From the NCBI GenBank assembly GCA_950097015.1, contig CATNEN010000041.1, positions 2,232,001-2,296,000 of the forward strand: 64,000 nucleotides of DNA. Direction: 5' to 3'. Of this stretch, positions 10,912-54,602 are shown one piece after another. Below the pieces are notes generated by a model. That model did not search any database. It had not been told where the DNA came from and saw nothing but the letters and a program-made list of their open reading frames with translations. The first letter of the stretch is position 1; the number at the start of each line of letters is the position of its first letter. Made by a program: the position numbers and the translations under genes. This DNA comes from Macrostomum hystrix. Taxonomy: Eukaryota; Animalia; Platyhelminthes.

Positions 10912-13900
10912 ATGAGCGTTTCTCTGAGGCTCATTGTCATATGCATTGCTGTGCTCGGAAATGGACACACCAGCCTCTGCAGCATTGATCTGGGTAAGAT
11001 TTCCGCTAGTAACTGCATGAGCAGCTTTTTTAACTAATGTGGCATGATGAGCTCGTACTTATTTGCCGGAACTTCAAGCTTGAAGTCATTTCTACAGAGC
11101 TTTTGATAGATTCTTTGAAGCTGTTCGAGCTTCAAATTATCACCGAACTTTTGTCACAGACGCAGAGGATGCGCCGCCTCTGGTGTCCTACGGCCCACAC
11201 CAGGTCAGGGCCGTCGGCACAGCTTATGCCGAGTTCCCGCCTGCGGCAGTGAAGCTCAGCTGGTCAACCGCAGGCCATCCAGCGCTCGCGAATCAGTCAT
11301 ACTTCAACGGTTACGCCACCTCCGACTACTTCCTGTTCACCTTCGACTTAGTCAACGACATTCGGGGCTACGTGATCGGCCGGGACTCTCCCGGCATCTA
11401 CGTGAAGACCTTCCAGCTCGCCTACTGCAGCTCGCCCGGATCAACACTGCTGAGCTACTCTGCAGGCTCTCATTACTCCCCAGCGCTGCTGCCTGGCATC
11501 AACAGCAGCGACATGAGCAACCACACCTACCAGCTTCCCTTCGGCAGCATCAGGGCGCGGGTGCTGAAGCTCACACCAGTCGACTTTGTTGGCAACAAAT
11601 CCATCAAGATTGAGTTCGTCGGTCTGCCCGTTCGTGAGTGAATTCAGGCTACTCCGAATTGTGCCGACGGTAGCCGCAGATCATTTTCGAGGTGCAGCTT
11701 GATTGAATTACCATAAATGATAACTGGCATAGGGGATGCTCGCTTACCCCTGCTTCACGAAGCCAACCCTTTGATACAGTACCAGTATAACGTCTTTAAA
11801 GATGAACAAATCAACCAGAGAATCTGGATTTTTTGGCAAAACATTTCGATTGTGATTTGATCGACTCAAGAACTTGACATCATTCTAGGATTTAGGCAGA
11901 CTAGGGCAAGTTTTGTCGAGGTTCCTCAAAATAAATTGCTCAATAGCTGCTATTCCACGCGGTCTCTCTGAGGACTAAGGTAGCAAATATACATTTCTCT
12001 CCTGTACTCTCCAATGGACTGAGTTTGAGGCTAGCCCATAGACAAGATAATCAACAGCAAATCATGCGAAATGTGGTTGTGCTTGGAGAACACTCCAGTT
12101 TAAACGGCTGCTGCTTTGGCTTTCAGAGTGCCCGCCCATTTCAACCTACAAGCTGACTCTGCCGGCGCCCAGGCAGGTCAACGCGACATCCTTCACACTG
12201 AGCACCAACAACAGCCAGACCGTCTGGTTCGAGGACCTCTATCATGTAACGAACGTGTCACTAACAGGAAACAACTGCACTCAGAGTCAGTCCATGGTGA
12301 TCACTTTCATCACTAACAATGGGATTGCCGTGGGTGACCCACTGGTGAGTTCTGTCTCCTGGCCACTTATGCGGGCCGAAAAGCCTACATATAGTGGCGG
12401 CAATAACTAGAAGAAGGATGTTGCGCTTGCAATTGGTGGGAACTTTTGCGAATCTCGCTTACACCTAAGGGCACGTTGAGTAGATAGCAAATAATAATTT
12501 TTTAACTTCATGAAATTCGCTAAGCGTCACAGCTTGGACACCTGCATCGGAGCATTTGAAGTATGGAAGACAATTACTTTTTTGAGAGCATTATTTCTTG
12601 AGCATTTTGTCAATGTGTTATTTTCTATAAATCGTTGAACTGTACAGTTTTGTAAAACAATTTGGAATAGGGCTTGATGTGAACTGTTTGGTTAAATAAA
12701 CGAAATGAAGGCAATCGATTGCGAATGCATGTTCTCTGTAGCAGCAAGAGGCCAAAAGAGATATCAGACACGGAGCTTCATCAGTGCATGCAAGCTACCT
12801 TTACTCCTGCTATTTCGATGCAACCACATTTTCAGACGCTGACGGCCAACCCGGAAGACATTATGGGCACGCTGTACCCACTGAACGCCACCGTCAACGC
12901 TGCCAAGGTCCGGGTTTACTTCCGAAGCAGAGACTGCGACAACGTTGAGTTCAAATTCTTCGGCTGCCTTGCCGACGGTGCGTCAAAATAAGCACAATCT
13001 CAGAATACTAATATGAGTTGACTTGATATTCAGCAACAGCCTGCCAGTCAATTGGCAGCATTGAATAGCGCCTCAGTTTTCGTCCATTATGTTAGACAGC
13101 CGTTATAATTTCCCCACGAGCTTTCCATTACTTTAATTTTATGTCTCTAGACAGAACCCTGCTGTTTTAGCTAGCCAAACTCTGGGACGTCTGTCAAGCG
13201 TGTTGTCAGAGGTGACAAGTCGCAGCTGAAGTGGAAGTTACCATTTGTTTCTTTCTGCAGCCTCTGTCTATTGTATTATTTTCCAGTTCAGGTTTTTTAA
13301 TTCCTTGAGAAGCTAAAACACTTTCAAAATGAGACCTGCTCCATGCCTGGGCCTGCATTCTGCCTCAGCCTTCTCCGGGCAGGAATGCATGGAAACTCTG
13401 GAAAGCAAACAGCACTGTGGGGCTCCCATAGTCCCACATTCTTTGCCATATGGTCACAAATGCTTTTTGCTCTACTTGGATGGACGACAACAATTGAAGC
13501 CATGCATTGACTTTTGAAGCGAAGCTTGCAGAAGCTTCTGATCAGCAGGTCGGGCCTTCCTCTGCTGCTACAGCTTTCTCATCTGTTTTGGAATCAACGA
13601 TTGCCTTCATCGATCAGTACAGGAAAGATGCGCATTGTGGCCCAGCTTCACACCAAGTCCCAAGTCCTGCACAGCTTCCCCCGCCCCTATATTGTCTTCA
13701 TCTGCGGCAGCTGAATCCAAGTCCTTGTTTGTCAGCCGCCTTGCGCGTGACCGGTCGAGTGGAGATTCTGCAGCTCTCGCTTATGCTACTTTAATATGCA
13801 GCTATGAGAAATCCAAGTGGGCCGGGTGGGCAGTGACTTCTGCAGCTGATTTTGCTGAAGGAAGTCGTTGGGGTAAACCAGGTGATGTAGCCTTAATTTT

Positions 13901-16900
13901 TGGAATGTCACTAGCGAGCCACTGAACCCGTTGCACAGAATGCCCGGCCTCGTCCTTCTACTTCAACGGTCAGTGCTACTATGCGGGCAAAGAGCCCCCG
14001 CGGCACCGGGCTCTGGGCCTGAAGCTCTGCCGAAGCGTTAACTGGATGGACAGAGGCGGCATATTTTTGCCGCGCTCCTTCGAGGACAACATAATCGTGA
14101 CCATGGCGGCCCTGCAGTTTGCCGGCTCACTGGATAGCACGTTCTTGGTTCACCTCGGCTTGACAAAGACCAGCAGCGGCTGGGTGAGCGAGGAAAAGCC
14201 TGGCTTGGCTTTAAAATGGAGCTTCTTTGAGCCGTTCCAGATTCAGCCGGAGCACACTGTAGTGCTGGCCAACCTAAGCCGTATGAGCTGGTGGGGCTCC
14301 GTCAACGCGTCCCTGCCCGCCCACACCATCTGCGAAGTAACTGCAGGTGATCCTTCGTAATAGCTGGAAAGGTGCCAATAAGCCGTAGCCAGGAGAGACA
14401 AATGCGTTGTTGTAGAAAAACTTTGCGAATGAAAATTTAGTTGCTTTCAATAAAAAAAGTATTTTAGCTAGAATAGAAGATTTAAGTGACAATATTGTCT
14501 TCATCCGCTAACCGGGAGCAGTTCCTCTTCCAGGCCGCAGGCAGAACCGAAGCTGCGATGAGCCCTACTTTCTGCCGGTGCCGGACAGGAGCTACGGCGC
14601 TGTCTCACAGTCGGAACTCAGCAAGTCAGCTGACAACATCAGCCTCTTTGACGCGACCAGGCAGTGTATGGAAGGCTCAGTTGCAGGCACCAGTTGCAAC
14701 TATGTAGTCCAGAACCAGACGCATTTTGCCATGTCGAATAAGCCCGTCCGAGGCTTCTACCCGTTCCAGAGCGAGAAGCTGGGCAGCTACACGGGCTTCT
14801 TCGTATTCTGCCGCTGTGAGTTCGTTTGCTGCCTGATTCTGACTCAACAACGGCTGTATAGACTGCACAGTGTACTACCCAGCTTGCCACATGGCTTGGA
14901 GCAACCCGTGTGTACCACAAGCCCATGCCTACCACAAACCCCCGCCTACCACAAACCCATGCCTAACACAAACCCCTGCCTACCACAAACCCATGCCTAA
15001 CACAAACCCCTGCCTACCACAAACCCCTGCCTACCACAAACCCCTGCCTAACACAAACCCCTGCCTACCACAAACCCCTGCCTACCACAAACCCCTGCCT
15101 AACACAAACCCCTGCCTACCACAAACCACTGCCTAACACAAACCCCTGCCTACCACAAACCCCTGCCTACCACAAACCCCTGCCTACCACAAACCCCTGC
15201 CTACCACAAACCCCTGCCTACCACAAACCCCTGCCTACCACAAACCACTGCCTAACACAAACCCCTGCCTAACACAAACCCCTGCCTACCACAAACCACT
15301 GCCTAACACAAACCCCTGCCTACCACAAACCCCTGCCTACCACAAACCCCTGCCTACCACAAACCCCTGCCTACCACAAACCCCTGCCTACTACAAACCC
15401 CTGCCTAACACAAACCCCTGCCTACCACAAACCCCTGCCTAACACAAACCCCTGCCTACCACAAACCACTGCCTAACACAAACCCCTGCCTACCACAATC
15501 CCTGCCTACCACAAACCCCTGCCTACCACAAACCCCTGCCTACCACAAACCCCTGCCTACCACAAACCCCTGCCTACCACAAACCCCTGCCTACCACAAA
15601 CCCCTGCCTAACACAAACCCCTGCCTACCACAAACCCCTGCCTACCACAAACCCCTGCCTACCACAAACCCCTGCCTACCACAAACCCCTGCCTACCACA
15701 AACCCCTGCCTAACACAAACCCCTGCCTACCACAAACCCCTGCCTACCACAAACCCCTGCCTACCACAAACCCCTGCCTACCACAAACCCCTGCCTACCA
15801 CAAACCCCTGCCTAACACAAACCCCTGCCTACCACAAACCCCTGCCTACCACAAACCCCTGCCTACCACAAACCCCTGCCTACCACAAACCCCTGCCTAC
15901 CACAAACCCCTGCCTACCACAAACCCCTGCCTACCACAAACCCCTGCCTAACACAAACCCCTGCCTACCACAAACCCCTGCCTACTACAAACCCATTCCT
16001 ACCACAAACCACTGCCTACCACAAACCCCTGCCTACTACAAACCCATGCCTACCACAAACCCCTGCATACCACAAACCCCTGCCTACTACAAACCCATGC
16101 CTACCACAAACCCCTGCCTACCACAAACCCCTGCCTACCACAAACCACTGCCTACCACAAACCCCTGCTTACCACAAACCACTGCCTACCACAAACCACT
16201 GCCTACCACAAACACATTTTTACAACAAACCCCTGCATACCACAAACTGCAGTTGGCCCAGAAAGTACAAGCCCCACTCCTCAAACCAGTCAAATTCATT
16301 TTGTTGAGAGAGAAAGAGTGCTTTTCGTTCCCGAATATGCGAACCTGAAACGCAAACCAACGGAAGCTTTACTTGTAAAGGCCTGTCGTATGATGGCAGT
16401 TGCGAGCTGGCGTACCCCTAACTGAACAGCTTTCGTGTGCGCCATCTGATTAAACTTAACAATGAAGGGCCGAAAGAAGTGTGAGATTTCATTCTGTATT
16501 TATTATTATTATTACTAATCTTAAGCGTCTGATGTCGAGAAAGTGTTCGCAAACTTCGCCAAGACAACTAGAACGTCCAACCCGGCTGTGGGAACGACCG
16601 GCGTACCTCTAGCAGCGGGCAGTTTCTGGAGTGGCACTGAGCTTGTCGTAAGTGGCAGCTGCATTCCATTAGGAGCAAATTAGTTAAGCTATTTAAAAAT
16701 GTATAAAATACGTGCTGATCAATGTAACGCATGGCCATGTGACTGTGCTCTTGCAGATGAAGTTGCCAGCAAAGTATCTGCTAGATAGTGTGCTCATGAT
16801 GTGCTACATTTCAAACTCAATGTTTGGCAGCCAGGATCTCAAATTTGTAATGGAATTTTTTAACTACAATTTCAACTCGTGGGAAATGACGTCCAACGAC

Positions 16901-19900
16901 TTCAAGAGTGGAGTGCCGGTGAGTCTTGGACCAATTCGTGTGGCTTCCAATCATTGTTACGAATTTTGTTACGACTCCTTCAACCTGGAATCCAACGAAG
17001 ATTTAAAATGCCTCCCGCGCTACGGAAATTGAAACCGAGTCTTATACCATATTCGCAGGCACCGGTGGTCATCCCGAAGGCATCGATATTCACTCCGATG
17101 TACTACCTGATCGTCAATGCCGCCTTCAGCGACAGTCTTCGATTGACGACAACTTGGGATCGCAGCGTTGGGATCAAAATGGATCTGTATGCAAGAATGA
17201 AGAACATAAGCGGTAGGACAGTTTTTACGAGTATATTGAGAATAACGTGTGATACTTGCTCACATTGTACTTATGTATGTACATGCGACATTTAGCAGCC
17301 CTCGCTATGCAAGAGAGTATCTCTCCTTTGGTAGACTTGACTCTGTCTCGTCTCTGCCAGTTAGCTAGCAGCCACAACACTTTAATTGATATACGTGAAG
17401 CTGATCCAAATTGGATTGCGATCGCTTTTACACTATTTATTTGCTACTCTTTCACAAGTGCAGTTGGGTGTTTCTTTTAACGCAGAGCTATCTTCGACCG
17501 CCTGCAATCGCTCGCAGTCAGTGGTGCTGGAGCATCCTTACTTCGGAGTCGCCACGCTGCCCTGCTATCGAAGCTCCATTGTCGTGTACCAGAAGCTTTC
17601 GGCAAGCCTCGAGACCGGACGAGCTGCAGTCGACTACCGTCTCGGTTTTGCTCTGAGCCGGCCTGCCATGGACTTCAACTTCGTTCAGGCTGACCAGCTG
17701 AGCTTCTGGACTGGACTGGACTTCTTAGAGCAGTTTCCGTCCTACTTTGCGAGCCAATGGCCTCTGACTCTGAGGCTGGAGGCCTCAAACGCACAGGGAC
17801 TCGGCAAGTATGTGGAGTGCAAGGAGTGGTGGGTCGGGTCCCGCGCAAGCGGCTACCGAATGCATGTGAAAGACTGCCAGACCGGCACTCTGGATGAGTA
17901 CACTTTGGTTGAGCTCGACAAGGCGCAGTTCGGCTTATTCTCTAATCTGTCTTGTGCGCAGCCGCTTTCTTCCTGGTGGCAAAGCCAGTGTGATTCCAAA
18001 AACTTCATCAAGCTGACAGCGGACTCAAATGGAGCGTCCAGGTGGCTTCCGGACCTGCCGGCTGACAGTGGCATGCGAGTTCGCATTCGCTTGTTTCCGC
18101 CTGGCATGATCCCCGGTGAGGCTGTTTTGTTTTCATTCCCGCAATGAAATACTGCTAATTAAAGTAAAAATTAAGAAAGTAGAAGTCATGCCGCAGCTAT
18201 AAAAAAGTTAAAAATACCTATCTACAGCCAGCCTTTGTGCGTATCAGCATGATGACATCCTCATTTCCTACAATTTAGACTCACATCGTGGCGAAATGGG
18301 TGATCCCTGCACAATGGATATCAACTGCAGCAACCAGACGGTCTGCATTCCACAAGGGTCTTCACTCACACCACAGTGTGGGTGTGCCAACCTACAAGAT
18401 CAGAATTCACAGACATGCGACATCACTGTGGACATGAGCATGTTTTTTATCAACGAAACGTTCAATATTCCGCCGATTCGAGGAAGTGCAAGTCAGTTCA
18501 CTGCAATGATTGGAATGAAGTATGCCAGCGGTAGCGCTGAAATACCAGATTCTGCTCCGCCAAAGCCACTCGCGAGGTTCTATTCTTACTTTCTTAACAA
18601 GTCATCCAACGTCTACCCCCCGGTCGATCAGCAGTTGTACTATCAGCACAGTCCCGTGAGAGTAATCGAAGGAGACATTTTCAAAGGACGCAGATTACAC
18701 GATGAATTCTTCTTCACCATCTCAGCCAACTTCAGCATGCCGAAAGGCGGGCAGTGTGTCTCTGCCTCTTACCTGTGTGTCGGCTTTATCGCCACGGAAA
18801 ATGAGACCGTGCGAGACTCAAACCCAGGAAACAATGCGATATGCAAAAATATTGATAGCCAAAAGGTGTGCCAACCAGAAGGTGACACCGCGCTGCTGAA
18901 CCTAACCCTGCTGCACCTGAGCCCAAGTCGGCTTGTGCGGCATCAGAACGTGTCTGCTGCATACCTTCTCACAATTCAAATCAAAGATATCAGCCGACCG
19001 ATTTTGGATTCTGTGACTGAAGACAATTTCGCTGTTTACCTATACCTGGCGACAAGCGACTGTCAGAAAGCTGGAGGCAGCGACAAGACTGTTAAAAACT
19101 GTTTAGCCGAGTCTCTTGATCGCTTTGAGATGCAAACGGAAAACCGAACTTTGCTTAAGATCGGGTACAGCAGTGGAGATGTTTTCACACTGAGTGTTCA
19201 GCCTCCGCCTTTTGAAATCAACCAGACTCAGTGCAACCGCACCTCGCACTTCTGTGTGATGTTTACTAGCGCTGTTAACTCGTCATACTCGGAGCGAAAC
19301 TTCAGCAACAGTGTGGCTTGTCATCCGGTGGAAACGTTCTGCATGATTTGTAAGTGTAACAATGCAGCTGCTTCAATTTTTATCTAGAGCTGATAGAACA
19401 CAGAGTGATTTTTTGTTTTTACTGAATGAATTTGGCTCACGTTAGATTCGTCTTAGTACCTGTCAATACGACAGGAAATTGAGAATTTCATGAGATTCGT
19501 GAATATCAAGTCTTGAATGTCTTGGGCCTTGACGAACAGGTAGACTTCACATTCAAGCCTTGAAATACTAAGGTTTTAGTGGAGTTTTCCACACAAACTG
19601 ATTGGTTCAATTAGGCTGCTCACTTAGCTAATTCCTTACCTGATCATTTTGCATGCAACCATGTGCCTTTTTAGTCTCCGACGTCTCGCTGGAAACTGTA
19701 GCCCTGATTCCGAATACGACAGACCCCTGGGTTCCTGAGTACCGCCACACTGCTTCGTTTTCGCTCGGCGTGCGCCTGGTCAGCGGCTCGAAGATCGACC
19801 CTGTAGTATCGCCCAGTATCAACTTCCAGCCAGAAATTTCGATTATATTTCCCAACTCCTCCGGCCCGCTACTAAACATGGAGAGCGTTGAGTGCATCGA

Positions 19901-22900
19901 GAAGGACAGGACCTTGGGACTTCAGGAAGGTCAAATTGTGTACGTCTTTTGCGACGCCACATTTTTCGTAAGCTTCCAACAGTGCACAACGAAGCAAGTG
20001 ACTCTGCGATTCGGAATGGTGAATTCGGTCAATCCGAGTTACATTGACGCGAACGAAGCGAATAACTGGAAGGATGTTGAAGTTATGAATTTATTCATTT
20101 GCATTGGTGAGATCATAAATGATTGGGTATTCTCGTAATTTGCAAGAATCCAACCACCTAGAATATTATTTCTAATTTTTTGTAGGACTCGCGATTTCCA
20201 ACCCGAGAGTTGTTCATGACACTTACATCTTACCCGATAAGGCAGCAAAGTTTGTCGTACAATGGGACTCTGGGACATATTTGGATTGTCTCATATCCAG
20301 TCAGGATGGTTACAATGCAACATGGAACTGGCAGCGGAACGGATCGATTGATAGCTACCGCGCCTACTCGTTGTCCGTCCAGCACCAATTCACTGGATCT
20401 TATGGAGACTATATTGTTAGCTACAGTTGTGCAAACGAAATTAGCAGCTACAGCGAAAGCAGATCCATCCTATACAATCCTAACCCGATTGATCTCGTCA
20501 TTACGGCTTTGTACGAGCGGCTGCCCGCTCCAAACAACGTAACTTTTGCGTTCGGTATGAAAACTCTGGGCAGTGGATATGTGAGACTAAACTGCACATT
20601 CACATTTTACACGGGCAACGTACAGTCGTATCAAGATCTCAGGTTCTACTTCGGCACTCCACTGAGCATTTCCTACATATATGATCCTGGGAAGTCTGTC
20701 GTAACTTCCTCCGTGCAGTGCTTGAACCCGTGCGGAACGTACAGCAATTCCTACGAATTTCGACTTTACACACCTTTCGAAATCGAAGGTGTTGAAATTC
20801 GGGTCAACGGGACCATCTTGCGCACTAATGAAAAAATCTCAATCCAGATCACGGTTCAGAACGGAACTGACGTCACTTACACCGTAACTATGACTGATGC
20901 AACTAGCAAAGTGATTGTGCACCCAGAGCCCGTTTCATACACACAGTCAATTAATGTTACGCATGCTTTCAATGTGCCTGGGGTCCACCGAATACATGTC
21001 CTCGCCTCGAGTCCGATGAATCGGGAAAGTAATGAATTTTCTGGAATTCTCGTGCAGAATCCCATCGCATCAATGTCTCAGCTGCCACATCAATATGCTG
21101 CGATGCCTAGCATCAACTTCTCGCTAATTCATGGGCCTGTTTTGCCGACAAATGTCACATGCGCAGTAAAACTTCAACGTGAACGCGACCATCAACTACA
21201 AACAATAGCATTTACAAAGTCAAACGAGTTTGTTCTTTTTAACTGCTCTCCGTTGTACATCACAGAGGAAATGCTATTGTCAGTCCATTGCTGGAATCTC
21301 GTCAGCGAGTACCGTAGGAACTCCACTATCGTGTGCGAAGAGGCCGTAGCAGGTCTCGAAGTAAACGTCAGTGAGACGTTCATTGAAGTCATGCAAATAA
21401 TGAACATTACAATCAATGTGTCAAATGGAACAACAGTGACGTATACAACTAATTTTGGTGATTCGTCGCCGAGTTCTGTGTACGTTCATCCAAGCAAGTA
21501 CGCATCTAGCAGTGCAGTACAATTGGCGCACTCTTATGCAACTGCGGGTAACTATGCCGTCTCGGTGAACACATCGAACCCCGTGAGTTCACAGAAAGTT
21601 CTGCTTCAGCCTATATCAGTGCTTAGGCAACTGATTAACGTCTCTGTAAACTACAAGGACACAGTTAATTGGCCCGTGGAAGGCGCGCGCTTCATTGTCA
21701 ACAATATTCCGGAAATGCAAACCGAACTTGTTGTATGCGATTTTCAGTTTTCAAACTTTGGATCCAGAAGAGTTTTTATACAAAACCTGACTAGAAATTC
21801 TGATGCCGTCGTCACATTCGCTTATTCCTTCGAGGCTGTGGGTACACAGGAAGTAAGCATGTGGTGCCGGAATCCAGTCACACCTGATGGAGTGAGGCGC
21901 AATTTTTCACTTGTGGTTTTGAAAGAAAATGTAAAAATTGCCAACTTCACATCGAATGGAACCGTATGGAACGGTGCACCTACTATATTTCTGCTTGATA
22001 TGCTTAGCCTTCCAAACGAAACCTGCATTGAGGTGTTTTACAATGATTCGCTCGTTCCAACTGAAATGCTGGGGTCAACGGAATGGTGTCGTGTTTTTGC
22101 AGATCAAAAAAATGCCAACTATAGTACAATCAATCTGTCTCTAACTAGAATTACGTGGAGTCGAGTCTTACCAACCGTGGGTGTAATTCCTGTTTCAGTT
22201 TTTGCCTACAACAACGTCAGCAACGATTCAGCGCAAACATGGGCTATTGTGATTGACATTCCTTGTGACAAACCGAAGGTAAGACTGTTCGACTCTGCAT
22301 CAACTCTTTTGCAGGCCTCATCTGTGCTGCAAAAAATGAAGTCAGAGCCTGTCAACTTGACTGCGATTGCTCAATATAACTGCTCAAAGCCGACCAACAT
22401 GAGTATCCTCTGGACCGTGGTGTCAGTGCAGTCGTCTGCCCAGCTTCCACTCTGTACAAGCGGCGGCACTCACTGCGAGATACTGCATCGGATCCTACCA
22501 TATGGACTGTACAATGTGTCATTCACTGCGGAACTGACGGCGGACCCTGCACTGAAGGAGACTGTGTGGATCTTGCTGAACATCACAAAGACTCCTTTGA
22601 GTCTTGGAGCGATTGTCGGTCTAGAAGCCGTGTCGTTCAATCAGAGTTTTGTGATGACCGCATCCATGTCAGCAAGAGATCTTGATGTTGAGGACGGTAA
22701 TCTCAGCGGCATGACATTCCAATGGAGCTGCTCGAGACAAGGTGAAGCAGATTCCACCAGCATCATCAGTGTTCCCTCACAGAATGATGTCAGATCAATT
22801 TCTGTTCTGAGAGGATGCTTCGGCAATGGACCAGGAGTCATTCTCGTTGGGAATGCAAGCAGTGCGGGTTCTCTCACAGTCAACTCATTCGAACCTATTT

Positions 22901-25900
22901 CCGAACGGAAGCTATGTGATCCGAGTTCGCTTGACGAAGGACAGCAGAGAGGTTTGGCAGTCGAAAACAGTGTTCGTCCAGTCACAGCAAAGGCCGGTTG
23001 GTCGTCTGAGCTGTAAGCAGAACTGTGACGTCAAAGTTTTAGCCAAGAAGCCGTTCGTGTACAACATTGTGTGCGAGCAGAACTGTGGCCACAAGTTCTT
23101 TGATGTGAGCAGCAACTTGACGATCGCGCGCCTAGATGCCAAGGGAAACGAGCTAGAGTCAGCGGGTCACTTAGCAAACGGTCAGGAGTTGTCCGTTGCA
23201 GCCGGCACGTTGATCGAGAGCTCGTTCTATCGTCTGAGAGGACAGATGTGGAATCTGGGTCAAGAGAGCACGGAGCTTTTTGCCAACGTGATTGTCAATG
23301 GTCCGCCTGTCGGTGGTCACTGTTATGTGGATCCAATAGGTACTTGATCTTAATTATATTTTGGAGTGTTCTCTTTGACTAACCTGACTGGAATGAGTAT
23401 TTTCTATTGAGGCTGCAAACAATCCGTAGTGGCTCGTATTCGTAGTACAATTTTCTACTTGGGATGCTTGCTGGTAGTTGATAACTTGGCTCGTATTCGT
23501 AGTACAATTTTCTACTTGGGATGCTTGCTGGTAGTTGATAACTTGGCTCGTATTCGTAGTACAATTTTCTACTTGGGTTGCTTGCTGGTAGTTGATAACT
23601 TGGCTCGTATTCGTAGTACAATTTTCTACTTGGGATGCTTGCTGGTAGTTGATAACTTGGCTCGTATTCGTAGTACAATTTTCTACTTGGGATGCTTGCT
23701 GGTAGTTGATAACGTGGCTCGTATTCGTAGTACAATTTTCTACTTGGGATGCTTGCTGGTAGTTGATAACTTGGCTCGTATTCGTAGTACAATTTTCTAC
23801 TTGGGATGCTTGCTGGTAGTTGATAACTTGGCTCGTATTCGTAGTACAATTTTCTACTTGGGTTGCTTGCTGGTAGTTGATAACTTGGCTCGTATTCGTA
23901 GTACAATTTTCTACTTGGGTTGCTTGCTGGTAGTTGATAACTTGGCTCGTATTCGTAGTACAATTTTCTACTTGGGATGCTTGCTGGTAGTTGATAACTT
24001 GGCTCGTATTCGTAGTACAATTTTCTACTTGGGATGCTTGCTGGTAGTTGATAACTTGGCTCGTATTCGTAGTACAATTTTCTACTTGGGATGCTTGCTG
24101 GTAGTTGATAACTTGGCTCGTATTCGTAGTACAATTTTCTACTTGGGATGCTTGCTGGTAGTTGATAACTTGGCTCGTATTCGTAGTACAATTTTCTACT
24201 TGGGATGCTTGCTGGTAGTTGATAACTTGGCTCGTATTCGTAGTACAATTTTCTACTTGGGATGCTTGCTGGTAGTTGATAACTTGGCTCGTATTCGTAG
24301 TACAATTTTCTACTTGGGATGCTTGCTGGTAGTTGATAACTTGGCTCGTATTCGTAGTACAATTTTCTACTTGGGATGCTTGCTGGTAGTTGATAACTTG
24401 GCTCGTATTCGTAGTACAATTTTCTACTTGGGATGCTTGCTGGTAGTTGATAACTTGGCTCGTTCGTTATTGGCTCGTTTTTAATCGGATTTTTATCCGT
24501 TATGGGATGAAGAAATTTTTACCTGAGACTGCTTGCCTACCTGGTGTGAATAAAAAATGCGACGTTGCTTCCCAAATTGGATTATTTGTGATTGACTCAA
24601 GTTTTCTATGGATTGAGAATTAGGCACTTGAGTCCAAGGAAATTTCAACTTTGCGGTTTCCTCAGCTACGAAACAGAATGTAGTTTTTTTACCTACTATC
24701 TTCCGGAGCCACGCCTTTATGTGAAAATTTTATGTGAAAACTCCTACTGTCAAATATTTATTTCAGAACTGAATCTAAGGACTCCGGCTCAGCTTGTCTG
24801 CGTCAACTGGACTGAATTCGGAGTCGCTACAGCACCTTTGGCCTACTCAGCAGCGCTGTTCCGGTCTGAGTCACCCCAACCTCTATCTCGATTCACATCG
24901 AGCGGCGCCAGCTTCCCCAGACTGCTGCTGCCCCTCGGAGCAACCAGCGGCTGGGGCACGGTCCAGTTTTTCATCGCGGACTCCTTCGGATATGAAGCGA
25001 CCATCAACATCAACATTTCGGTCAGCATGCTTTGTCATATTTGCTAGAATATTTAGCCTTTTTCTAGCAATGTAATTGAAAGTTTAAACACACGATGCAG
25101 ATTTCAGCCTTGTCTTGCACGTCAATCGAGCTGTTGGTAGATCTGGGAAACTTGCTGAGCTCCGGCAGTTCGGATGTAAGCAGATTCCTGAGCTCCGGAG
25201 ATTACAGCGCCGCTGCGGTTACACTGAATTCCATCGCACTGGTGCTAAATGCCTGGAATGAGGACGCTGAAGGAGCCGCTTCAACGCCGGAAAAGCGGGC
25301 GGCTTTCGACTTGCAGATGGCATCCGTAAAATATTTCATTTGCCTTTCCGGTGGCTAGAAAGCCCGCAAGATTTCTTGCTTGCTGATGCCTGAAATCTCT
25401 AACCTGAATTTCAGATGAGATTGAAGTTTCTAAACTTTGTGGACGCATTCCCCATGAACTACTCAACGGATGCGCTCAAAACTACATCAAATCTTCTGCG
25501 ACTTGGGGTCAATAAGCCGAGCCAGTTGGACATTGCTGGGCAGGTGAGAAATCAAATGACCGATAAAGTTCCGCTTTTTTATTTCGTCTAATCAACATCG
25601 CTGCGTGTTACGACCGGACCTTGTCATTAACCGACCTTCTGGTGTGGCTTGAGGTCTGCCCCTGCCCAGAAAATTCTAATGCTTTCTGGGTCAAACCTTC
25701 ATAATATACTTTAGAACTTTTTAGCTAGTCTGTTTCTTCCACATTTCTTCAGTTAAGCTATTATTATTAAGCACAAAATTGTGCTAGCTGAAAATCCCGA
25801 AACAATAGCTATCCAGAAAGCTGACCTTCCAGCGAAAACGATCAGCGGAGGTGATGCATAATATGAGAAACCATATTTCTACCTTGATCAGGAGCTTGCA

Positions 25901-28900
25901 ACAACAGTGATGAGAAAGGTCGTTTCACAGACCTGGCTTGATCGCAAGAACATTTCACAACAGACAAGCGAGGAAATTCAAAATGACCAAATTAAAACTG
26001 GACTTAGCATTTGGAACGCCTCCGAGGCCTGGGCAGGAAACTACAGTGACATTGCGCAGGTGAAAAGTGTTATGCTCAAGATGCTCGACTGCATCGACGA
26101 AGTCGGACTTCTAGCTCTAGAGACAGTCACCAACTTCACAAAGATTGAGTCTGGCTTCGCTTTAATAGGCATCACCCAGGACACTCCGGATGCGAATGTG
26201 ACCGGAGCAAAAGTGGACACTGACATTGGGAGCATCTCCCTGCCAAGATTCTCCAGCACAAATCCATCTGGAAGGTGCAATGTCACACTAATGATGAGTA
26301 CATCGAATCCGTATCATTGGAGTCAATCACGATCCAAAGTAACCACATCTTTCCTGCGAGGCCGCTCTCAAGGATGCAGCTTTGATGACTTCCAGAATAG
26401 GGGTCGATCCAAGCGTTCAACCCCATCAGCACTGACTTATCAGCTTCAATTGGCCTCGCATGAGGAACCGCTGCTAAGAGTTACTGCGACGCCCACTGAC
26501 AAGTGGCTCATGATGTATCACCACTTCGTGGCTACAGGAGACGCTGTTCAGCTTGTCGTTCAGCCTGATGCGAACAACCAACTAGAACTTTTTGTTAACG
26601 AAGGCACACTACCAGATCCTCAGAATCACACACTGTACAGATTGGTTCCGCAGTCCTTGAATTCGACCAGCGGCAAAGCGAGTACTCAGGAGCTCATTCT
26701 GCTTCCAGCAAGTCTCTTCTCAGTCAACCAGAGTGTGTTCATTGGAATGAGGAGGCTGGGCTGCTCAAGAGATCCATCAGGTACTCCCAACTGTGGCAAC
26801 ACCACCTTGTCCTATCAGCTGAGAATCTCAACCCAACTTTGCTACTCATGGGACAGCGTGGCCGAGGAGTGGCGAGTGTTGGAAGCAACAAGCTGCCAGG
26901 TGAGTGATCTGACACCACTGAATCACGTAACAGTTCTTGTGGATGACCAACTATTGGTAAGATTTAACTCTGTCTCACAGGCCAGCGACCAGACTGCGGT
27001 GGGAAGGCCGGCCTTCAAGGTTCACCTGTTCGGCAGCATCGGAGCTGGAATCTCATTTATGCCAAACACCATCAACTTCGGCAAGCTGTTTGAGAACTGG
27101 CAGGGCAAGCTGAGTGAAAGCAGGGCGGTGCTGTCAGTCGTGATCGCTCTGTGGGTGCTGTTCATTCCGCTGGCAGTGATCCTGAGGCGCATGGACCTCC
27201 GAGATGCACAGAAGGTGAGCAGTCGCTTCGACTGAGTCTGCCGCTCGGAATCTGGCTAATGCTCACTCGTTCACTTTTCAGTTTCGATTCTTGCCTCTAA
27301 AAGACGAGCAGCAGAGTAAGGAATTCGTCTACAAGATTGAAGTGTTCAACGGGTCTAACAAGGGAAATGAGGTTCCACTCGGAGTCTTTATCTCAGTCAA
27401 GGGACTCAATGCAAGTCAGCTGGTGAGAACTCTGCACGATGGAGAGAGACGGGTGAGAGTTGTTTCAGTGCACCTTCAATGTACGATGATAGAGATTCAA
27501 TTGCAAAATCTCAAATACTTCGTTCATTTTTAGAACTTTTTGAGAGGAACTGTCGACAACTTCTTAATGACTGCCGATGAGCATCTCGGAGACATTCGGT
27601 CCATCTGCCTGACATACGACAAGACAGAGTCGGGAGCAGGACGCTGGTATGTCGGTCGCGTGATCGTCACGGATTGCAGTACGGACTACAGATATGTCTT
27701 CCTGGTGGAAGACTGGCTGAGTCCTGGCGTCGATGCTTCAGTCAACTGCGCCTCCTCACTCGACCTAAAGTTCTCGAAGAACCTCGTTCGCAACCACCTG
27801 AGCAGAAGATTGCAGGACGACCACATCTGGCTCTCAATGCTTCGGCGAAAGGTGGACACAAACTTCAGTAGACTGCAACGTCTTGGAGTGTGCTGGAGCT
27901 TGCTGTTCATGACGATGATCGCGAACGCCATGTGGTGAGTGTCAGGCTGGCTGGATTGACTAACGAGGTACAAGCGTATCTAACATGAGCTTTTAACGTA
28001 TAAATCAGAGGAAATAAACAAACTCAATAACGTGAAACTAGGTACAAAGTCGCCGACAGCTCGTCAGAGGCCTTCCGAATCGGACCAGTCAAGGTGTCCT
28101 ACGGATCTCTCATCACATCCATTCTCGGTGCGTTCACAGTGCTGCCGGTTTCCATGGCGACGGTGCTGTTGTTTCTAAAGTCGAAGCGGCAGCCAGACCA
28201 CACTGAGGCAGCACAGCGGTACCAGCCTGAGTCGAGTCGCTGTCGGCGAGTCATCAGCAGCGATGCGGCCACAGAGGAGGAGCCCGGAGCTGAGGAACAG
28301 AAGAAGAGCTGGTTCTCGCAGCTGCTGCTACCGCACTGGTGCCAGTACGTTGGCTGGGTGCTGCTCATCGCGAGTGTTCTCACGGCTGGGGTCTTTATCG
28401 TCTTCTACGCAATGGACTGGGGCAAGGACAAGTCTGAGGACTGGCTGCTCGCGTTTTTCTTGTCCTTCTTCGAGACGGTGCTTCTCATTCAGCCGCTCAA
28501 GGTGCTGGCCGTCGGGCTGGTGCTGGCTCTGCTGATGAGGAAGGACTACGACTCCATGGACTCTCGCTGCATCCGAGTTCGCGAGCTGCAGGACAGCCGA
28601 GGTCAGATATTGTACCAATCATCTCTTACCATCAGTGCTGTGCTCATGTCTCTCATGCTCAGACATCCTGCTCACTGTTCACTTCCCCCCTGCTCACTTC
28701 CAGAGAAGTTCACGACGTTACAAGATGTCCTGGCCTCTCAGTCGAACGACAAACTCAGAAAAAAGGCAAAGTCGACGGCAATCAGCATCGGTCTGAACCT
28801 GGCGTACCTATTCCTCCTGTACTGTGTCTGTTATGGATCGATGGACCCGATCGCGTTCCATCTGAACAACGGCCTGAAGATGCGACTCACTGTCAACCAG

Positions 28901-30576
28901 CCGAGCCCACAGTTCAGTCTCGACAAGGTATGTACTCGTAATCAGCTGTGAAATCCGTCTATGACAAAGTGACATCTCAAGCAAACAACAAACCGAATTG
29001 CAGGTGCAAAAGTGGGAAGACCTCCATGCGTGGTTCAATCACACGATTTTGCCGAACCTGTACCCCACACTGGCAGTGAATGGCAGACCACTGAGTGAGG
29101 CTGAACAAAAGTTCATTTCCGATGGTGTGGGATTCCGCCTTGGCCAGGTGAAGTTGCGACAGCTCAGGGTGCGTCCGTTGCGTCGAGACTCTCTGGCCGA
29201 GTCTGGCGAGTACAGTGCCCGCACCGAGGACCGCAGCTGCTACGGAATCGGCTGGAGCACTCAGCTACTCTGCAACAAGAGCGCGAAAGGCCTGGTCGCA
29301 GCTTTCCAGTCAAAGCAAGTCAGCCCGTGGCCGACTTGGGGCACCTACAACTCTTACAGTGGAAGTGGCTACGTGCTCGATCTGCCCAACAACTTCTCCG
29401 AGGCTGCCGCGTTGCTGAATGAAGCCAGACTGCAGCATTGGATCGACAACTACACCAGAGCAGTGCTGGTCGAGTGCAGCTTGTTCTATCCCGACACGAA
29501 CTTCTTCACCTCTGTGTCCATCCTGACTGAGCTGCCTCCGTTCGGCGGCGCCTTGAGCTCCGCCAGTCTCCGATCGACGAGTCTCTATCGCTACATCGGT
29601 GCCAGCGGAGCTCTCAGACTGTGTGCTGAGCTGCTGGCCGCCGCCACGACGCTCATTCTGCTGCTGTTGCAGCTGCGAGCCTGCTGGCAGCAGGGACCTT
29701 CCAGTTACCTCTCCAATGCTTGGAATCTGTGCCGCTTGCTCACCAGCCTCATCATGATCGCTGGACTCATCTTCCTCCTGCTGCGCAGCTTCGCCACAGT
29801 CGCAGCTCTCGAGTCCATGCAGAACTCCAACACTGGCAGTCTGGAAACCGTCATGTTCTTCGACGAGTCGTTTTACTACTGCCTCGGAATCGCCATGTTC
29901 TTCGTGCAGATCGGCTTCCTGAACCTGGTCCGCTACTCCCGCAGCCTTGCGCACCTGTCGGGCACTCTGAGGAACTCCGTGTCTGAGCTGACCTCCTTCT
30001 TCTGGCTTTTCCTCGTGATCTTCTTGGCCTTCGCCTTCACCACATACCTGGTTCTGTGCCCGGTGGACGGCGAGTATCGCAGCCTGATGCAGACGCTCAT
30101 CACCCAGCTGTCTGTGATGCTTGGAAAGTTCAATGCCACCTTCGAGGACAGCCGAAGCGCTCTGTACAAGGTTCTGTTCTTCTCCTACACGTTCACCATC
30201 GTATTCATCGTGCTCAACATCTTTGTTGTGCTGCTCAACGATAGCTACGCAGACGCCACGAAGAGCGACGAGAACAGTCAGCAGCAGGAGGCCTTCCAGG
30301 TTATTGACACGATTTTTGAATCATTGAAGTCCGTGGTTCGCCCAAGTCGTCAGTCGCCATACATTGACGACGGTTACTCCAATGGTAAGTTTAAAATAAG
30401 TTCTTGTCCTCAATCTTTTCATGCCTGTTAGGTGGACAAGTAGGCAGTTTTCGCGAATTCGTCGATTGACAAAGGGACTGATTTTCACGAAATTCTCAGG
30501 TGTGGAAGCTAGCGCCATAGTTCTTCTGGAGAGGCTGGATGAGCTGCAGCAGCACGTGGGCAGCCACCTTCGCTGA
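10912..30576 (+). CDS. Polycystin-1-like (PKD1L/REJ family) 11-TM receptor-channel, paralog 1, ~4,000 aa, ~23 exons; one +1 frameshift at 22891
   Basis: Exons traced with compatible phases: 10912-10993 (signal peptide), 11160-11633, 12127-12344, 12836-12977, 13939-14346, 14534-14815, 16526-16647, 16757-16918, 17059-17211, 17486-18115, 18279-19349, 19675-20106, 20186-23339, 24767-25020, 25101-25325, 25415-25543, 25892-27214, 27282-27452, 27534-27934, 28042-28601, 28704-28927, 29004-30384, 30500-30576. Recognisable PKD repeats (TNFGDS..HSY..AGNY.V), REJ (LPYGLYNVSF, FQWSC), GPS-like CYSWD..W, PLAT (RGTVDNF, WYVGRVIV), TOP domain (LRQLRV, YSGSGY, WIDNYTRAV) and pore/S6. Confidence 0.9.
14912..16250. 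repeat. 17-bp minisatellite (CCACAAACCCCTGCCTA), ~75 copies, intron of polycystin paralog 1
   Basis: Read directly; absent from the matching intron of paralog 2. Confidence 0.96.
23431..24456. repeat. 57-bp minisatellite, 18 near-identical copies, intron of polycystin paralog 1
   Basis: Unit GGCTCGTATTCGTAGTACAATTTTCTACTTGGGATGCTTGCTGGTAGTTGATAACTT; 1026 bp = 18 x 57. Confidence 0.97.
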
Positions 30577-31200
30577 GATCCAGAATTTTTAAAAGCATTG
30601 ACAATTTTTTTAGCTGTTTCTATTGAAAGGGAAAACAGTCCTGAATATATCCTTGACTCTGCTTCTATTTTGTTTTCTTTGTTCATTAGTTTTTTAGAAT
30701 TGTTTTTTTCGATGCACAGCTTCTGAAAGCGATATTTTTAATGATTTTCTCTATGCAATTGTACGATGTCTTGTTTGAACCTTATAGAAAAAGACCCATA
30801 CTAATCAGTAGAATCAGCAGAATGACAACTGTGCGAGCGGGGTGAAGCCTTTCAGAGCGGTCTACTTTTTGCTGACAGGAATTTAAGAACAGTTAGGAAC
30901 AGGCAGGTGTCACAGACAGGCATGTTTCCCACCTTTTTTATTCCCCTTGTAGATCCGCCGATCACATTTCCACTTTTTTCAGGCTTCTTCTTCTTATATT
31001 TTCTTTTAATTGCTTTAGGCAGCACATGTTAAGCTATTTATTTTTTTCTGTAATTGGCCTCAAGTTTGCACTTAGTCTCTCTGTCTTTTGCAAATAAAGT
31101 GAATTTCCTCGCAGTTGAGGTATCTGCAATCCTACACTTGCAGTTGATGATTCTTCATTGACTTCGACTTCCTTCATTGCCTACGGATTGACTGCTGTCC

Positions 31201-31993: not shown

Positions 31994-32128
31994 GATTCTG
32001 TACCCGGTGGACGGCGAGTATCGCAGCCTGATGCAGACGCTCATCACCCAGCTGTCTGTGATGCTTGGAAAGTTCAATGCCACCTTCGAGGACAGCCGAT
32101 CGAAGTTGTCTGTACAAGGTTCTGTTCT
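31994..32128 (+). pseudogene. Short orphan fragment of the polycystin pore exon (YPVDGEYRSLMQTLITQLSVMLGKFNATFEDSR), broken by a small insertion
   Basis: Near-identical to 30053-30187; interrupted by TCGAAGTTG after GAGGACAGCCGA, then the similarity ends. Confidence 0.85.
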
Positions 32129-38725: not shown

Positions 38726-38761
<36 letters not shown>

Positions 38762-53257: not shown

Positions 53258-53800
53258 GATCCAGAATTTTTAAAGCATTGACAATTTTTTTTGCTGTTTC
53301 TATTGAAAGGGAAAACAGTCCTGAATATATCCTTGACTCTGCTTCTATTTTGTTTTCTTTGTTCATTGGTTTTTTAGAATTGTTTTTTTCGATGCACAGC
53401 TTCTGAAAGCGATATTTTTAATGATGGGGTAATAAGGGGTGAAGCCTTTCAGAGCGGTCTACTTTTTGCTGACAGGAATTTAAGAACAGTTAGGAACAGG
53501 CAGGTGTCACAGACAGGCATGTTTCCCACCTTTTTTATTCCCCTTGTAGATCCGCCGATCACATTTCCACTTTTTTCAGGCTTCTTCTTCTTATATTTTC
53601 TTTTAATAGCTTTAGGCAGCACATGTTAAGCTATCTATTTTTTTTTCTGTAATTGGCCTCTAGTTTGCACTTATTCTCTCTGTCTTTTGCAAATAAAGTG
53701 AATTTCCTCGCAGTTGAGGTATCTGCAATCCTACACTTGCAGTTGATGATTCTTCATTGACTTCGACTTCCTTCATTGCCTACGGATTGACTGCTGTCCC

Positions 53801-54429: not shown

Positions 54430-54602
54430 TATGGAATCCCTGGAGCACTCGAAAGTATTATTGAGTATCTTGGAAACATTTTCTCGTTTCATTGGAAAAT
54501 AAGTCTATTCTTAGTGAGCTTTTGGCTTATTGTCTTGCCAAATTTCCATATTTAATACTTTTCACGTCCCGGTTTCATTCTCGGCTGAACACAGCCGCGA
54601 TT

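What the first reader, a model, noticed from the sequence alone, without database searches (positions are those of the whole stretch)
10912..20106. Polycystin-1-like channel with an innate-immune/adhesion-style ectodomain (discoidin x3, C-type lectin, PAN-like, fibrinogen-like, EGF)
Seen after splicing, in order: signal peptide; F5/8C-discoidin-like (11160-11633, RARVLKLTPV..IKIEFVG); a second (12127-12977, ..EFKFFGC); C-type-lectin-like (13939-14346, CP..FYFNGQCY..W..HTICE); PAN/apple-like (14534-14815, tentative); a third discoidin-like (16526-17211); fibrinogen-related (17486-18115); an EGF-like Cys module (18300-18420); then PKD, REJ, GAIN, PLAT and 11 TM. Known: human PKD1 has LRR-WSC-PKD-CTL-LDLa, PKD1L2 has CTL+SUEL, and urchin REJs have CTL/CUB/SUEL. 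I do not know a polycystin with this string or with a fibrinogen domain. Inference: a glycan- or pattern-sensing receptor coupled directly to a TRPP-type channel, acting in mucus, microbe, gamete or substrate-adhesion sensing in ciliated cells.
Basis: partly seen in the sequence, partly recalled or inferred. Interest (0 to 1): 0.8.

Follow-up and report, generated by a model that had tools for sequence, protein, structure and literature searches.

The report
Flatworm polycystin channel with lectin-like head
A Macrostomum flatworm gene really does fuse a string of adhesion- or lectin-type modules, including a divergent fibrinogen-like domain not reported in this family in the papers and homologues checked, to a polycystin-1-type receptor-channel. 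Only about half of the proposed modules could be verified, and sugar sensing is not shown.

Summary
They are under purifying selection, and M. lignano has the same exons in the same order, where public gene models join them to a PKD/REJ/PLAT/TRPP-channel body.

Pfam recognises none of the N-terminal modules. More sensitive tests give a graded picture:
- **Fibrinogen-related domain:** well supported (profile-profile E 2.5e-5 to a true FReD, plus four concordant weaker lines).
- **C-type-lectin-like domain:** probable.
- **Discoidin-like 1:** weak profile hits to lactadherin C2 and discoidin I.
- **Discoidin-like 2:** a confident jelly-roll of the CBM32/discoidin class.
- **Discoidin-like 3 and PAN-like:** unverified.
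- **EGF-like:** Cys spacing only.

By my reading, the lectin-like and fibrinogen-like modules lack the canonical Ca2+/sugar-site residues, so "glycan sensor" is an inference. Matrix tethering for mechanosensation is an equally good reading.

The window holds two tandem paralogs. Copy 1 has a 1-bp frameshift in its REJ exon and copy 2 has at least three frame changes; assembly error versus decay is undecided. Earlier notes of this scan report other lectin-rich polycystin genes elsewhere in this genome, so this is one member of a lineage-specific expansion.

Verdict: a new variant of a known kind, of moderate interest.

The parts
10912..10993 (+). Exon 1: start codon and putative signal peptide (alternative donor at 11008)
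   Evidence: ATG after an in-frame stop, hydrophobic core (Kyte-Doolittle max 1.83), GTAAGA donor in phase 1. No RNA or cross-species support obtained for this exon.
11160..11633 (+). Exon 2: module D1, probable divergent F5/8C discoidin domain (158 aa)
   Evidence: 62% aa identity to copy 2 and 74% to M. lignano; dN/dS 0.27-0.28. Profile against PDB: lactadherin C2 E 0.035 and discoidin I E 0.062, aligned to the domain's C-terminal end. Pfam negative. AF2 pLDDT about 25.
12127..12344 (+). Exon 3: first half of module D2
   Evidence: CAG acceptor and GTGAGT donor. Conserved in copy 2 and in L001.
12836..12977 (+). Exon 4: second half of module D2 (about 120 aa in all), a small jelly-roll of the CBM32/discoidin class
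13939..14346 (+). Exon 5: C-type-lectin-like domain (136 aa), non-canonical
   Evidence: Language-model features: 18 of 20 nearest clusters are Lectin_C, top score 0.95. AF2 strand/helix order is beta-beta-alpha-alpha-beta x5, but pLDDT is below 50. Pfam and PDB sequence searches negative. By my reading, EPN/WND positions are not kept and only the outer Cys pairs are present.
14534..14815 (+).
   Evidence: Four Cys conserved in three lineages; dN/dS 0.24-0.43. No Pfam or PDB profile hit.
14913..16247 (.). Intronic 17-bp minisatellite (78.6 copies), not part of the protein
   Evidence: Tandem Repeats Finder. It lies between the exon 6 donor and the exon 7 acceptor. The homologous M. lignano intron is about 115 nt without it.
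16526..16647 (+). Exon 7: first third of module D3
   Evidence: RNA contig joint 16647->16757, GT..AG. 56% aa identity to L001.
16757..16918 (+). Exon 8: middle of module D3
   Evidence: RNA joint. Conserved in copy 2 and in L001.
17059..17212 (+). Exon 9: end of module D3 (146 aa in all); fold undetermined
   Evidence: Read from the sequence. No PDB or Pfam hit. AF2 pLDDT below 50. hhalign finds no similarity to D1 or D2.
17486..18115 (+). Exon 10: divergent fibrinogen-related domain (210 aa), the best conserved ectodomain module
18279..19349 (+). Exon 11: EGF-like six-Cys module (about 18300-18420) followed by about 310 aa of unassigned ectodomain
   Evidence: C-x5-C-x5-C-x10-C-x-C-x10-C spacing, kept in copy 2 and M. 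lignano with a 7-residue second gap there. RNA contigs at 18294-18578 and 19103-19270, and joint 19349->19675. No Pfam or PDB hit.
19675..20106 (+). Exon 12: unassigned ectodomain module (144 aa)
   Evidence: RNA joint and contig. Conserved. No Pfam hit.
20186..23344 (+). Exon 13: PKD repeats and REJ domain; the frame is broken by one extra G near 22891
   Evidence: Pfam PKD 9.6e-16 and REJ 6.5e-15 / 7.8e-13 in two frames. 1-bp difference from copy 2 inside an otherwise identical tract.
25862..30428 (+). Exons for the pre-TM1 region, PLAT, TM2-TM5, and the polycystin (TOP) domain plus six-TM TRPP pore
   Evidence: Pfam PLAT 3.4e-6, Polycystin_dom 5.1e-35, PKD_channel 2.1e-23. PDB: PKD2L1/PKD2 about 1e-39, PKD1L3 5e-24. 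Hydropathy peaks.
34042..53300 (+). Copy 2: tandem paralog with the same module order
   Evidence: blastn and tblastn. Ectodomain aa identity 42-80%. The 3' half is 96% identical at DNA level, introns included. Frame changes near 37458-37464, 40630-40645 and 43222-43229.

Best explanation
This is a real gene of the polycystin-1 (PKD1-like/REJ) family in a Macrostomum flatworm.

**Shown.** Its roughly 1,400-residue N-terminal ectodomain was assembled by exon shuffling of phase-1 modules. In order these are: signal peptide; a probable discoidin domain; a small CBM32/discoidin-type jelly-roll; a non-canonical C-type-lectin-like domain; a four-Cys module; an unassigned beta-rich module; a divergent fibrinogen-related domain; an EGF-like knot; and about 450 unassigned residues. 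Then come PKD repeats, REJ, PLAT and an 11-TM body ending in a PKD2-like pore. The modules are conserved and under purifying selection.

**Inferred.**
- The protein sits in the membrane of a sensory or ciliated cell and pairs with PKD2-like subunits, as PKD1/PKD2 and PKD1L3/PKD2L1 do.
- Its head binds an extracellular partner (matrix, mucus or another cell's surface), and binding or pulling on the head is passed through the REJ/GPS region to the channel.
- Because the lectin-like and fibrinogen-like modules lack the canonical Ca2+/sugar residues, the partner is as likely a protein or polymer as a simple glycan.
- The family is expanded in Macrostomum. Heads diverge between tandem copies while the channel halves are kept alike by gene conversion.
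For: - **Exons and phases:**
- **Conservation and selection:**
- **RNA joints and coverage:**
- **M. lignano models joining the modules to the channel:**. P0014 runs from D1 to the channel and P0009 from CTL to the channel.
- **The genomic locus has the same exon order and splice positions:**
- **Polycystin body:**
- **FReD:**
- **CTLD:**
- **D1:**
- **D2:**
- **Tandem copies with a 96%-identical 3' half, introns included:**
- **Pairing with PKD2-type subunits** follows from the solved PKD1/PKD2 and PKD1L3/PKD2L1 complexes that appear among the PDB hits.
Against: - Pfam recognises no N-terminal module in any lineage.
- Both AF2 models are poor overall (mean pLDDT 42 and 36). Only D2 has a trustworthy fold.
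- D3 and the PAN-like module have no fold evidence.
- Junctions from exon 1 to exon 7 and from exon 9 to exon 11 of this gene itself are not covered by RNA. The joined form rests on phase compatibility and on M. lignano models.
- Copy 1 carries a frameshift in the REJ exon.
- No expression site, ligand or current is known.
Confidence: 0.6

Rival explanations
1. Mechanosensory tether. The head is not a chemical sensor. It is an anchor that fixes the channel complex to extracellular matrix, mucus or a neighbouring cilium, so that flow or touch pulls on the PKD/REJ stalk and gates the channel.
For: - Planarian PKD1-like genes are expressed in ciliated sensory stripes, and the paper on them treats sensory-neuron function (PMC11448475).
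- By my reading the lectin-like and fibrinogen-like modules lack canonical sugar/Ca2+ sites.
- Discoidin, fibrinogen-like and EGF modules also occur together in adhesion proteins such as CASPR2, whose discoidin domain is among the D2 matches.
Against: The planarian PKD1-like proteins described lack such N-terminal heads, so a head is not needed for their function. There is no expression or localisation evidence for this gene.
Confidence: 0.3
2. Gamete or mating-partner recognition receptor, analogous to the sea-urchin sperm receptor for egg jelly. The head binds a partner-derived polymer and triggers ion flux in sperm.
For: - REJ proteins with lectin domains are sperm receptors, and their lectin domains evolve fast (PMC1934368).
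- Heads of the two tandem copies are only 42-62% identical outside the FReD, while the channel halves are 96% identical at DNA level.
Against: Every module shows dN/dS well below 1. Site-wise tests were not possible with three lineages. No testis or sperm expression data.
Confidence: 0.12
3. The copies in this window are decaying duplicates of a large gene family and make no full-length protein.
For: One frameshift in copy 1. At least three frame changes in copy 2. Fragments of the last exon are scattered downstream.
Against: - Synonymous change far exceeds non-synonymous in all modules.
- Spliced RNA contigs match copy 1 at 99% or more.
- Single-base indels are a common error of long-read assemblies (my knowledge).
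- The tract around 22891 is otherwise identical between the copies.
Confidence: 0.15
4. The 5' exons belong to a separate secreted lectin-like gene that merely lies upstream of a polycystin gene.
For: RNA junctions between exons 1-7 and between exons 9-11 were not observed in the one run available. Several M. lignano database entries are short N-terminal fragments.
Against: - All junctions are phase-1 compatible, with no stop or terminal exon in between.
- M. lignano models P0014, P0010 and P0009 run from the head into the channel.
- The same order is kept in two tandem copies and in a second species.
Confidence: 0.05

Closest known systems
Human PKD1L2 / PKD1L3 and polycystin-1 (PKD1)
   Same: REJ, PLAT, 11-TM body and a TOP domain plus TRPP pore, with PKD repeats in PKD1 and PKD1L2. 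A lectin-type module sits at the N-terminus: C-type lectin in PKD1, PKD1L2 and PKD1L3, and SUEL lectin in PKD1L2 (PMC1934368; Pfam lists).
   Different: No LRR, WSC, LDL-A or SUEL modules were detected here. Instead there are a fibrinogen-related domain and discoidin-class jelly-rolls. Neither is listed for any human or sea-urchin member, nor found in 20 long homologues. The pore exon is closer in sequence to PKD2/PKD2L1 than to human PKD1.
Sea-urchin receptors for egg jelly (SpREJ1-10)
   Same: The PKD1 family with variable heads built from lectin and EGF modules. The family is expanded to ten genes, and the lectin heads evolve quickly (PMC1934368).
   Different: SpREJ heads use C-type lectin, SUEL, EGF and WSC modules. 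No fibrinogen or discoidin module is reported. SpREJ function in sperm is established; nothing is known here.
Planarian PKD1-like genes (Smed pkd1L-1, -2, -3)
   Same: Same phylum and the same core (REJ, PLAT, polycystin domain, channel). Expressed in ciliated sensory cells (PMC11448475).
   Different: They are described as lacking a complex N-terminal ectodomain, which that paper assigns to chordate PKD1 only. The Macrostomum genes have about 1,400 residues of extra head.
CASPR/CNTNAP (neurexin IV) adhesion proteins
   Different: CASPR proteins have laminin-G domains and a single TM, with no PKD/REJ/channel part. No sequence relationship was shown, only a similar choice of modules.
Public M. 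lignano gene models A0A1I8GF37, A0A1I8INE8, PAA77182.1
   Same: Same module order and splice positions; 48-82% aa identity per exon. These are relatives of the window's genes in the sister species.
   Different: They are unreviewed predictions carrying different automatic names (LysM, SRCR, CUB, C-type lectin, EGF-like). Their N-terminal parts have no precomputed Pfam hit. No paper names their locus tag.

Membership tests
Polycystin-1 family (PKD1-like / REJ) | REJ domain | tested here: met
   Pfam PF02010 at E 6.5e-15 and 7.8e-13 on the two frames of exon 13; 1.5e-47 on M. lignano P0001.
Polycystin-1 family (PKD1-like / REJ) | PKD repeats before REJ | tested here: met
   Pfam PF00801 at E 9.6e-16, two stretches.
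Polycystin-1 family (PKD1-like / REJ) | GPS/GAIN autoproteolysis region before TM1 | tested here: inconclusive
   No Pfam GPS hit. The translation shows only a loose C...W...W...C and an H-L-F motif before TM1.
Polycystin-1 family (PKD1-like / REJ) | PLAT domain after TM1 | tested here: met
   Pfam PF01477 at E 3.4e-6 on the exon; 4e-9 to 5e-9 on M. lignano proteins.
Polycystin-1 family (PKD1-like / REJ) | Eleven TM segments, the last six forming a TOP domain plus TRPP pore | tested here: met
   Polycystin_dom 5.1e-35 and PKD_channel 2.1e-23. PKD2L1/PKD2 about 1e-39. Ten to eleven hydropathy peaks.
Fibrinogen-related domain (PF00147) | Reaches Pfam's score threshold | tested here: not met
   No hit up to E = 10 in three lineages.
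Fibrinogen-related domain (PF00147) | Detectable homology to bona fide members by profile methods | tested here: met
   - hhalign E 2.5e-5, 75% probability, 99 columns, to P0005, which has Pfam Fibrinogen_C at 1.4e-81.
- E 3.5e-4 in a 1.84e9-protein library.
- PDB top 8 hits are all angiopoietin FReDs, E 0.016.
- 20 of 20 feature neighbours are Fibrinogen_C.
Fibrinogen-related domain (PF00147) | FReD fold (A, B and P subdomains) | tested here: inconclusive
Fibrinogen-related domain (PF00147) | Acidic Ca2+-binding loop before the conserved P-domain Cys | tested here: not met
   The loop is a gap in the alignments to angiopoietin-1 and to P0005. The identity of the loop is from my knowledge of FReD structures.
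F5/8 type C discoidin domain (PF00754) | Reaches Pfam's score threshold (D1, D2, D3) | tested here: not met
   No hit up to E = 10.
F5/8 type C discoidin domain (PF00754) | D1: sequence similarity to solved discoidin domains | tested here: inconclusive
   The best three PDB rows of the profile search are lactadherin C2 (two chains, E 0.035) and discoidin I (0.062), in register to the C-terminal Gly. The fold model failed.
F5/8 type C discoidin domain (PF00754) | D2: distorted jelly-roll of the galactose-binding-domain-like class | tested here: met
F5/8 type C discoidin domain (PF00754) | D3: any similarity to discoidin domains or to D1/D2 | tested here: not met
   No PDB profile hit to any discoidin. 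hhalign to D1 and D2 finds nothing. Model pLDDT below 50.
C-type lectin-like domain (PF00059) | Reaches Pfam's threshold, or matches solved CTLDs by sequence | tested here: not met
C-type lectin-like domain (PF00059) | CTLD fold and signature | tested here: inconclusive
   18 of 20 feature neighbours are Lectin_C, 0.95. The strand/helix order fits but pLDDT is below 50. N-terminal hairpin Cys pair and outer Cys pair present, inner pair absent (my reading). UniProt names one M. lignano fragment 'C-type lectin domain-containing'.
C-type lectin-like domain (PF00059) | Ca2+/sugar site (EPN or QPD plus WND) | tested here: not met
   E-P-F and W-W-G stand at the places I take to be these positions in all lineages (alignment; the motif positions are from my knowledge of the CTLD consensus).
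PAN/apple domain (PF00024) | Profile or structural similarity | tested here: not met
   No Pfam hit and no PDB profile hit. Only four conserved Cys. Not folded.
EGF-like domain | Six Cys with the C-x-C spacing | tested here: met
   C-x5-C-x5-C-x10-C-x-C-x10-C, kept in copy 2 and M. lignano with a 7-residue second gap there. Pfam negative. UniProt names P0007 'EGF-like domain-containing'.

The most novel reading that the evidence does not exclude
Macrostomum flatworms have expanded a family of polycystin channels whose fast-diverging heads of immune-type recognition modules (fibrinogen-related, C-type-lectin-like, discoidin-class) act as direct recognition sensors. The targets would be microbes, conspecific mucus, mating partners or gametes. 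A pattern-recognition module would then be wired straight to an ion channel, with the tandem copies giving a repertoire of specificities on a homogenised channel.
Probability: 0.2. Interest if true: 0.75.

Novelty: new variant of a known kind. Interest (0 to 1): 0.45.

Why it matters
Polycystin-1-family proteins are thought of as receptors whose ligands are mostly unknown. Their heads are the least understood part.

A lineage in which the head is rebuilt from fibrinogen-related and discoidin-class modules, and duplicated in tandem with diverging heads on a conserved channel, offers a natural experiment on what the head does. Macrostomum lignano is amenable to RNAi and transgenesis, so expression, knock-down and ligand tests are feasible.

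It also shows that flatworm PKD1-like proteins are not all head-less, contrary to what the planarian survey suggests. Finally, these modules are invisible to Pfam, so standard annotation under-reports such architectures.

Tried and rejected
- **Pfam, exon by exon and on M. lignano segments, up to E = 10:** nothing in the head.
- **PDB sequence or profile searches:** blank for the CTL, exon 11 and PAN-like modules, and one chance-level, non-discoidin row for D3.
- **A four-sequence FReD profile** scored worse against PDB than the single sequence (E 0.33 against 0.016).
- **hhalign among D1, D2 and D3:** no mutual similarity, so 'three copies of one domain' is not shown.
- **AF2 on two three-module segments of the M. 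lignano homologue:** mean pLDDT 42 and 36; only D2 was usable. The alignments are shallow (three lineages). MAFFT repeatedly misplaced short exon rows, which had to be dropped.
- **ESM-Atlas shape search on model 1:** only generic CBM jelly-rolls at TM below 0.3 by query.
- **Word-index protein searches:** only Macrostomum relatives of the head, and 20 long homologues of the channel, none with fibrinogen or discoidin Pfam domains. The sample is small, so absence is weak evidence.
- **Paper searches:** none describes this architecture or the locus tag.
- **RNA:** one small run only, two junctions.
- M. lignano database proteins served as the joined reference instead.

Full report
**What is in the window.**
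The + strand carries two tandem paralogous genes, copy 1 at about 10912-30600 and copy 2 at about 34000-53300. Their 5' halves are 68-82% identical at DNA level where they can be aligned at all. Their 3' halves (25974-30745 against 48654-53425) are 96% identical, introns included. The finding covers the 5' half of copy 1.

**Organism.**
The nearest database proteins are all from Macrostomum lignano, at 48-82% identity per exon. None is above 85% over a stretch of 80 residues or more. This fits earlier notes of this scan that the genome is a sister species of M. lignano. I did not test that further.

**The polycystin body.**
- Pfam on single exons gives PKD (9.6e-16), REJ (6.5e-15 and 7.8e-13), PLAT (3.4e-6), Polycystin_dom (5.1e-35) and PKD_channel (2.1e-23).
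- The last large exon matches solved PKD2L1 and PKD2 channels at about 1e-39, PKD1L3 at 5e-24 and PKD1 at 3e-9.
- A hydropathy scan gives one TM before PLAT, four to five after it, and five in the pore exon.
- No GPS hit was obtained.

**Exon model of the head.**
- D2 is two exons, 12127-12344 (GTGAGT donor) and 12836-12977.
- D3 is three exons: 16526-16647, 16757-16918 and 17059-17212.
- Exon 13 starts at 20186.

Every module (exon 2, exons 3+4, 5, 6, 7-9, 10, 11, 12) begins and ends in phase 1. From general knowledge, this is the pattern of shuffled extracellular modules.

The 17-bp minisatellite at 14913-16247 is intronic.

**Are the exons real?**
- All are conserved in copy 2.
- All are conserved in an M. 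lignano genomic locus, L001, in the same order and with splice sites at homologous positions.
- Nei-Gojobori counts give pN far below pS in every module: dN/dS 0.14-0.45 between copies and 0.09-0.43 against L001.
- The FReD exon is the most constrained head module (80% and 77% aa identity).

**Are they one gene?**
- The one public run that holds the stretch (kind not on record, contigs only) has contigs matching at 99% or more that skip 16648-16756 and 19350-19674, both GT..AG. It also covers exons 11, 12 and 13. That shows transcription and two junctions, not the whole chain.
- The chain is supported by phase compatibility and by M. lignano models. A0A1I8GF37 (P0014, 3975 aa) runs D1-D2-CTL-PAN-D3-FReD-exon 11-exon 12-PKD-REJ-PLAT-channel. 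A0A1I8INE8 (P0009) and PAA77182.1 (P0010) cover most of it.
These database proteins served as the joined reference.

**The modules.**
Pfam finds nothing in any head module, in copy 1, copy 2 or M. lignano, up to E = 10.

*Fibrinogen-related domain (exon 10).*
- phmmer against PDB sequences returns angiopoietin-1/-2 FReDs as the top eight hits (best E 0.016), aligned over the F-W-x-G, L-R-x-E, G-Y-R and C-A...W-W...C motifs.
- A two-sequence profile searched against 1.84 billion proteins finds only Macrostomum polycystins, two rows without FReD features (P0003, P0004), and P0005 at E 3.5e-4. P0005 is a bona fide Fibrinogen_C protein (Pfam 1.4e-81).
- hhalign of the module profile to P0005 gives E 2.5e-5 over 99 columns.
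- Language-model features give 20 of 20 Fibrinogen_C neighbours.
- The acidic Ca2+ loop of canonical FReDs is a gap in both alignments.

*C-type-lectin-like domain (exon 5).*
- 18 of 20 feature neighbours are Lectin_C, top 0.95.
- The low-confidence AF2 segment has the beta-beta-alpha-alpha-beta5 order.
- The alignment shows the long-form N-terminal Cys pair and the outer pair, but not the inner pair.
- By my reading, E-P-F and W-W-G stand where EPN/QPD and WND would.
- PDB and Pfam are blank.

*D1 (exon 2).* The four-sequence profile's three best PDB rows are lactadherin C2 (two chains, E 0.035) and discoidin I (E 0.062), in register to the C-terminal Gly. The fold model failed.

*D3 (exons 7-9) and the PAN-like exon 6.* No support of any kind. 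Four Cys are conserved in exon 6.

*EGF-like.* The six-Cys spacing with C-x-C is conserved.

*Unassigned.* About 310 residues of exon 11, exon 12 and the first 250 residues or so of exon 13.

**How unusual is it?**
- The survey of sea-urchin and human PKD1 proteins lists C-type lectin, SUEL, EGF, WSC, LRR and PKD modules, and no fibrinogen or discoidin (PMC1934368).
- The planarian survey describes PKD1-like proteins without complex heads (PMC11448475).
- Twenty long homologues found through the channel region (Lingula, a jellyfish, vertebrate PKD1/PKD1L2) carry WSC, GPS, Lectin_C, Gal_Lectin and LRR, but not PF00147 or PF00754. This is a small sample.
- The head cassette and the FReD subtype have no detectable relatives outside Macrostomum.
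- The same architecture already exists as unannotated, inconsistently named public models in M. lignano.
- Earlier, mostly unchecked, notes of this scan report several other lectin-rich polycystin genes in this genome, one said to have a predicted counterpart in an annelid.
- So this is one member of a lineage-specific expansion of a known receptor family with a new choice of head modules.

**Function.**
Nothing here shows a ligand.
- The body predicts a PKD2-partnered channel subunit, by analogy with the solved complexes.
- The head predicts binding to something extracellular.
- By my reading the canonical Ca2+/sugar sites are lost in the CTLD-like and FReD modules. That weakens 'glycan sensor' and makes matrix or protein binding, including a mechanosensory tether role, at least as likely.
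- A REJ-like gamete role remains possible.

**Integrity.**
- Copy 1 has one extra G near 22891 relative to copy 2, within an otherwise identical tract. It shifts the REJ frame.
- Copy 2 changes frame in the PAN-like exon, exon 11 and exon 13.
- Given strong purifying selection and transcription, assembly error is the more likely cause, but this was not tested.

Noticed in passing
window 14913-16247: A 17-bp minisatellite of 78.6 copies (93% matches) fills most of the intron between the PAN-like exon and D3. It is open in all three frames and mimics a Pro/Thr-rich coding repeat. The homologous M. lignano intron is about 115 nt without it.
   Followed up: partly
window 23430-24463: A 57-bp tandem repeat of 18 copies (99% matches) in the intron after the REJ exon of copy 1. 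In frame 2 it reads as a long open frame.
   Followed up: no
window 22885-22895 vs 45155-45165: Copy 1 has one extra G inside a tract otherwise identical to copy 2, which breaks the REJ reading frame. It is not in a homopolymer run.
   Followed up: partly
window 37458-37464, 40630-40645, 43222-43229: Copy 2 changes reading frame three times within exons that are continuous in copy 1 and in M. lignano.
   Followed up: partly
window 25974-30745 vs 48654-53425: The channel halves of the two copies are 96% identical with introns included, while the heads are 42-80% identical at protein level. This is the signature of gene conversion limited to the 3' half.
   Followed up: partly
window 30052-30307 / 54601-54856 and 31996-32136 / 52733-52869: Fragments of the last channel exon are repeated downstream of each copy (95-99% identity).
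   Followed up: no
L001 9662-10117 (M. lignano NIVC01000759.1): The public model PAA77182.1 starts inside the D1 exon, although the whole D1 exon is present and open upstream. The M. lignano annotation truncates the head.
   Followed up: partly
window 22105: One low-depth RNA contig carries an extra A after 22105. The window's frame there agrees with M. lignano proteins, so the contig is probably in error.
   Followed up: partly
M. lignano proteins P0009, P0013, P0014, P0016, P0018, P0007: Members of one 90%-identity cluster and a close paralog carry different automatic UniProt names (SRCR, CUB, LysM, C-type lectin, EGF-like). Pfam gives no such hits on the head segments scanned, so the names are unreliable guides to the head.
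   Followed up: partly
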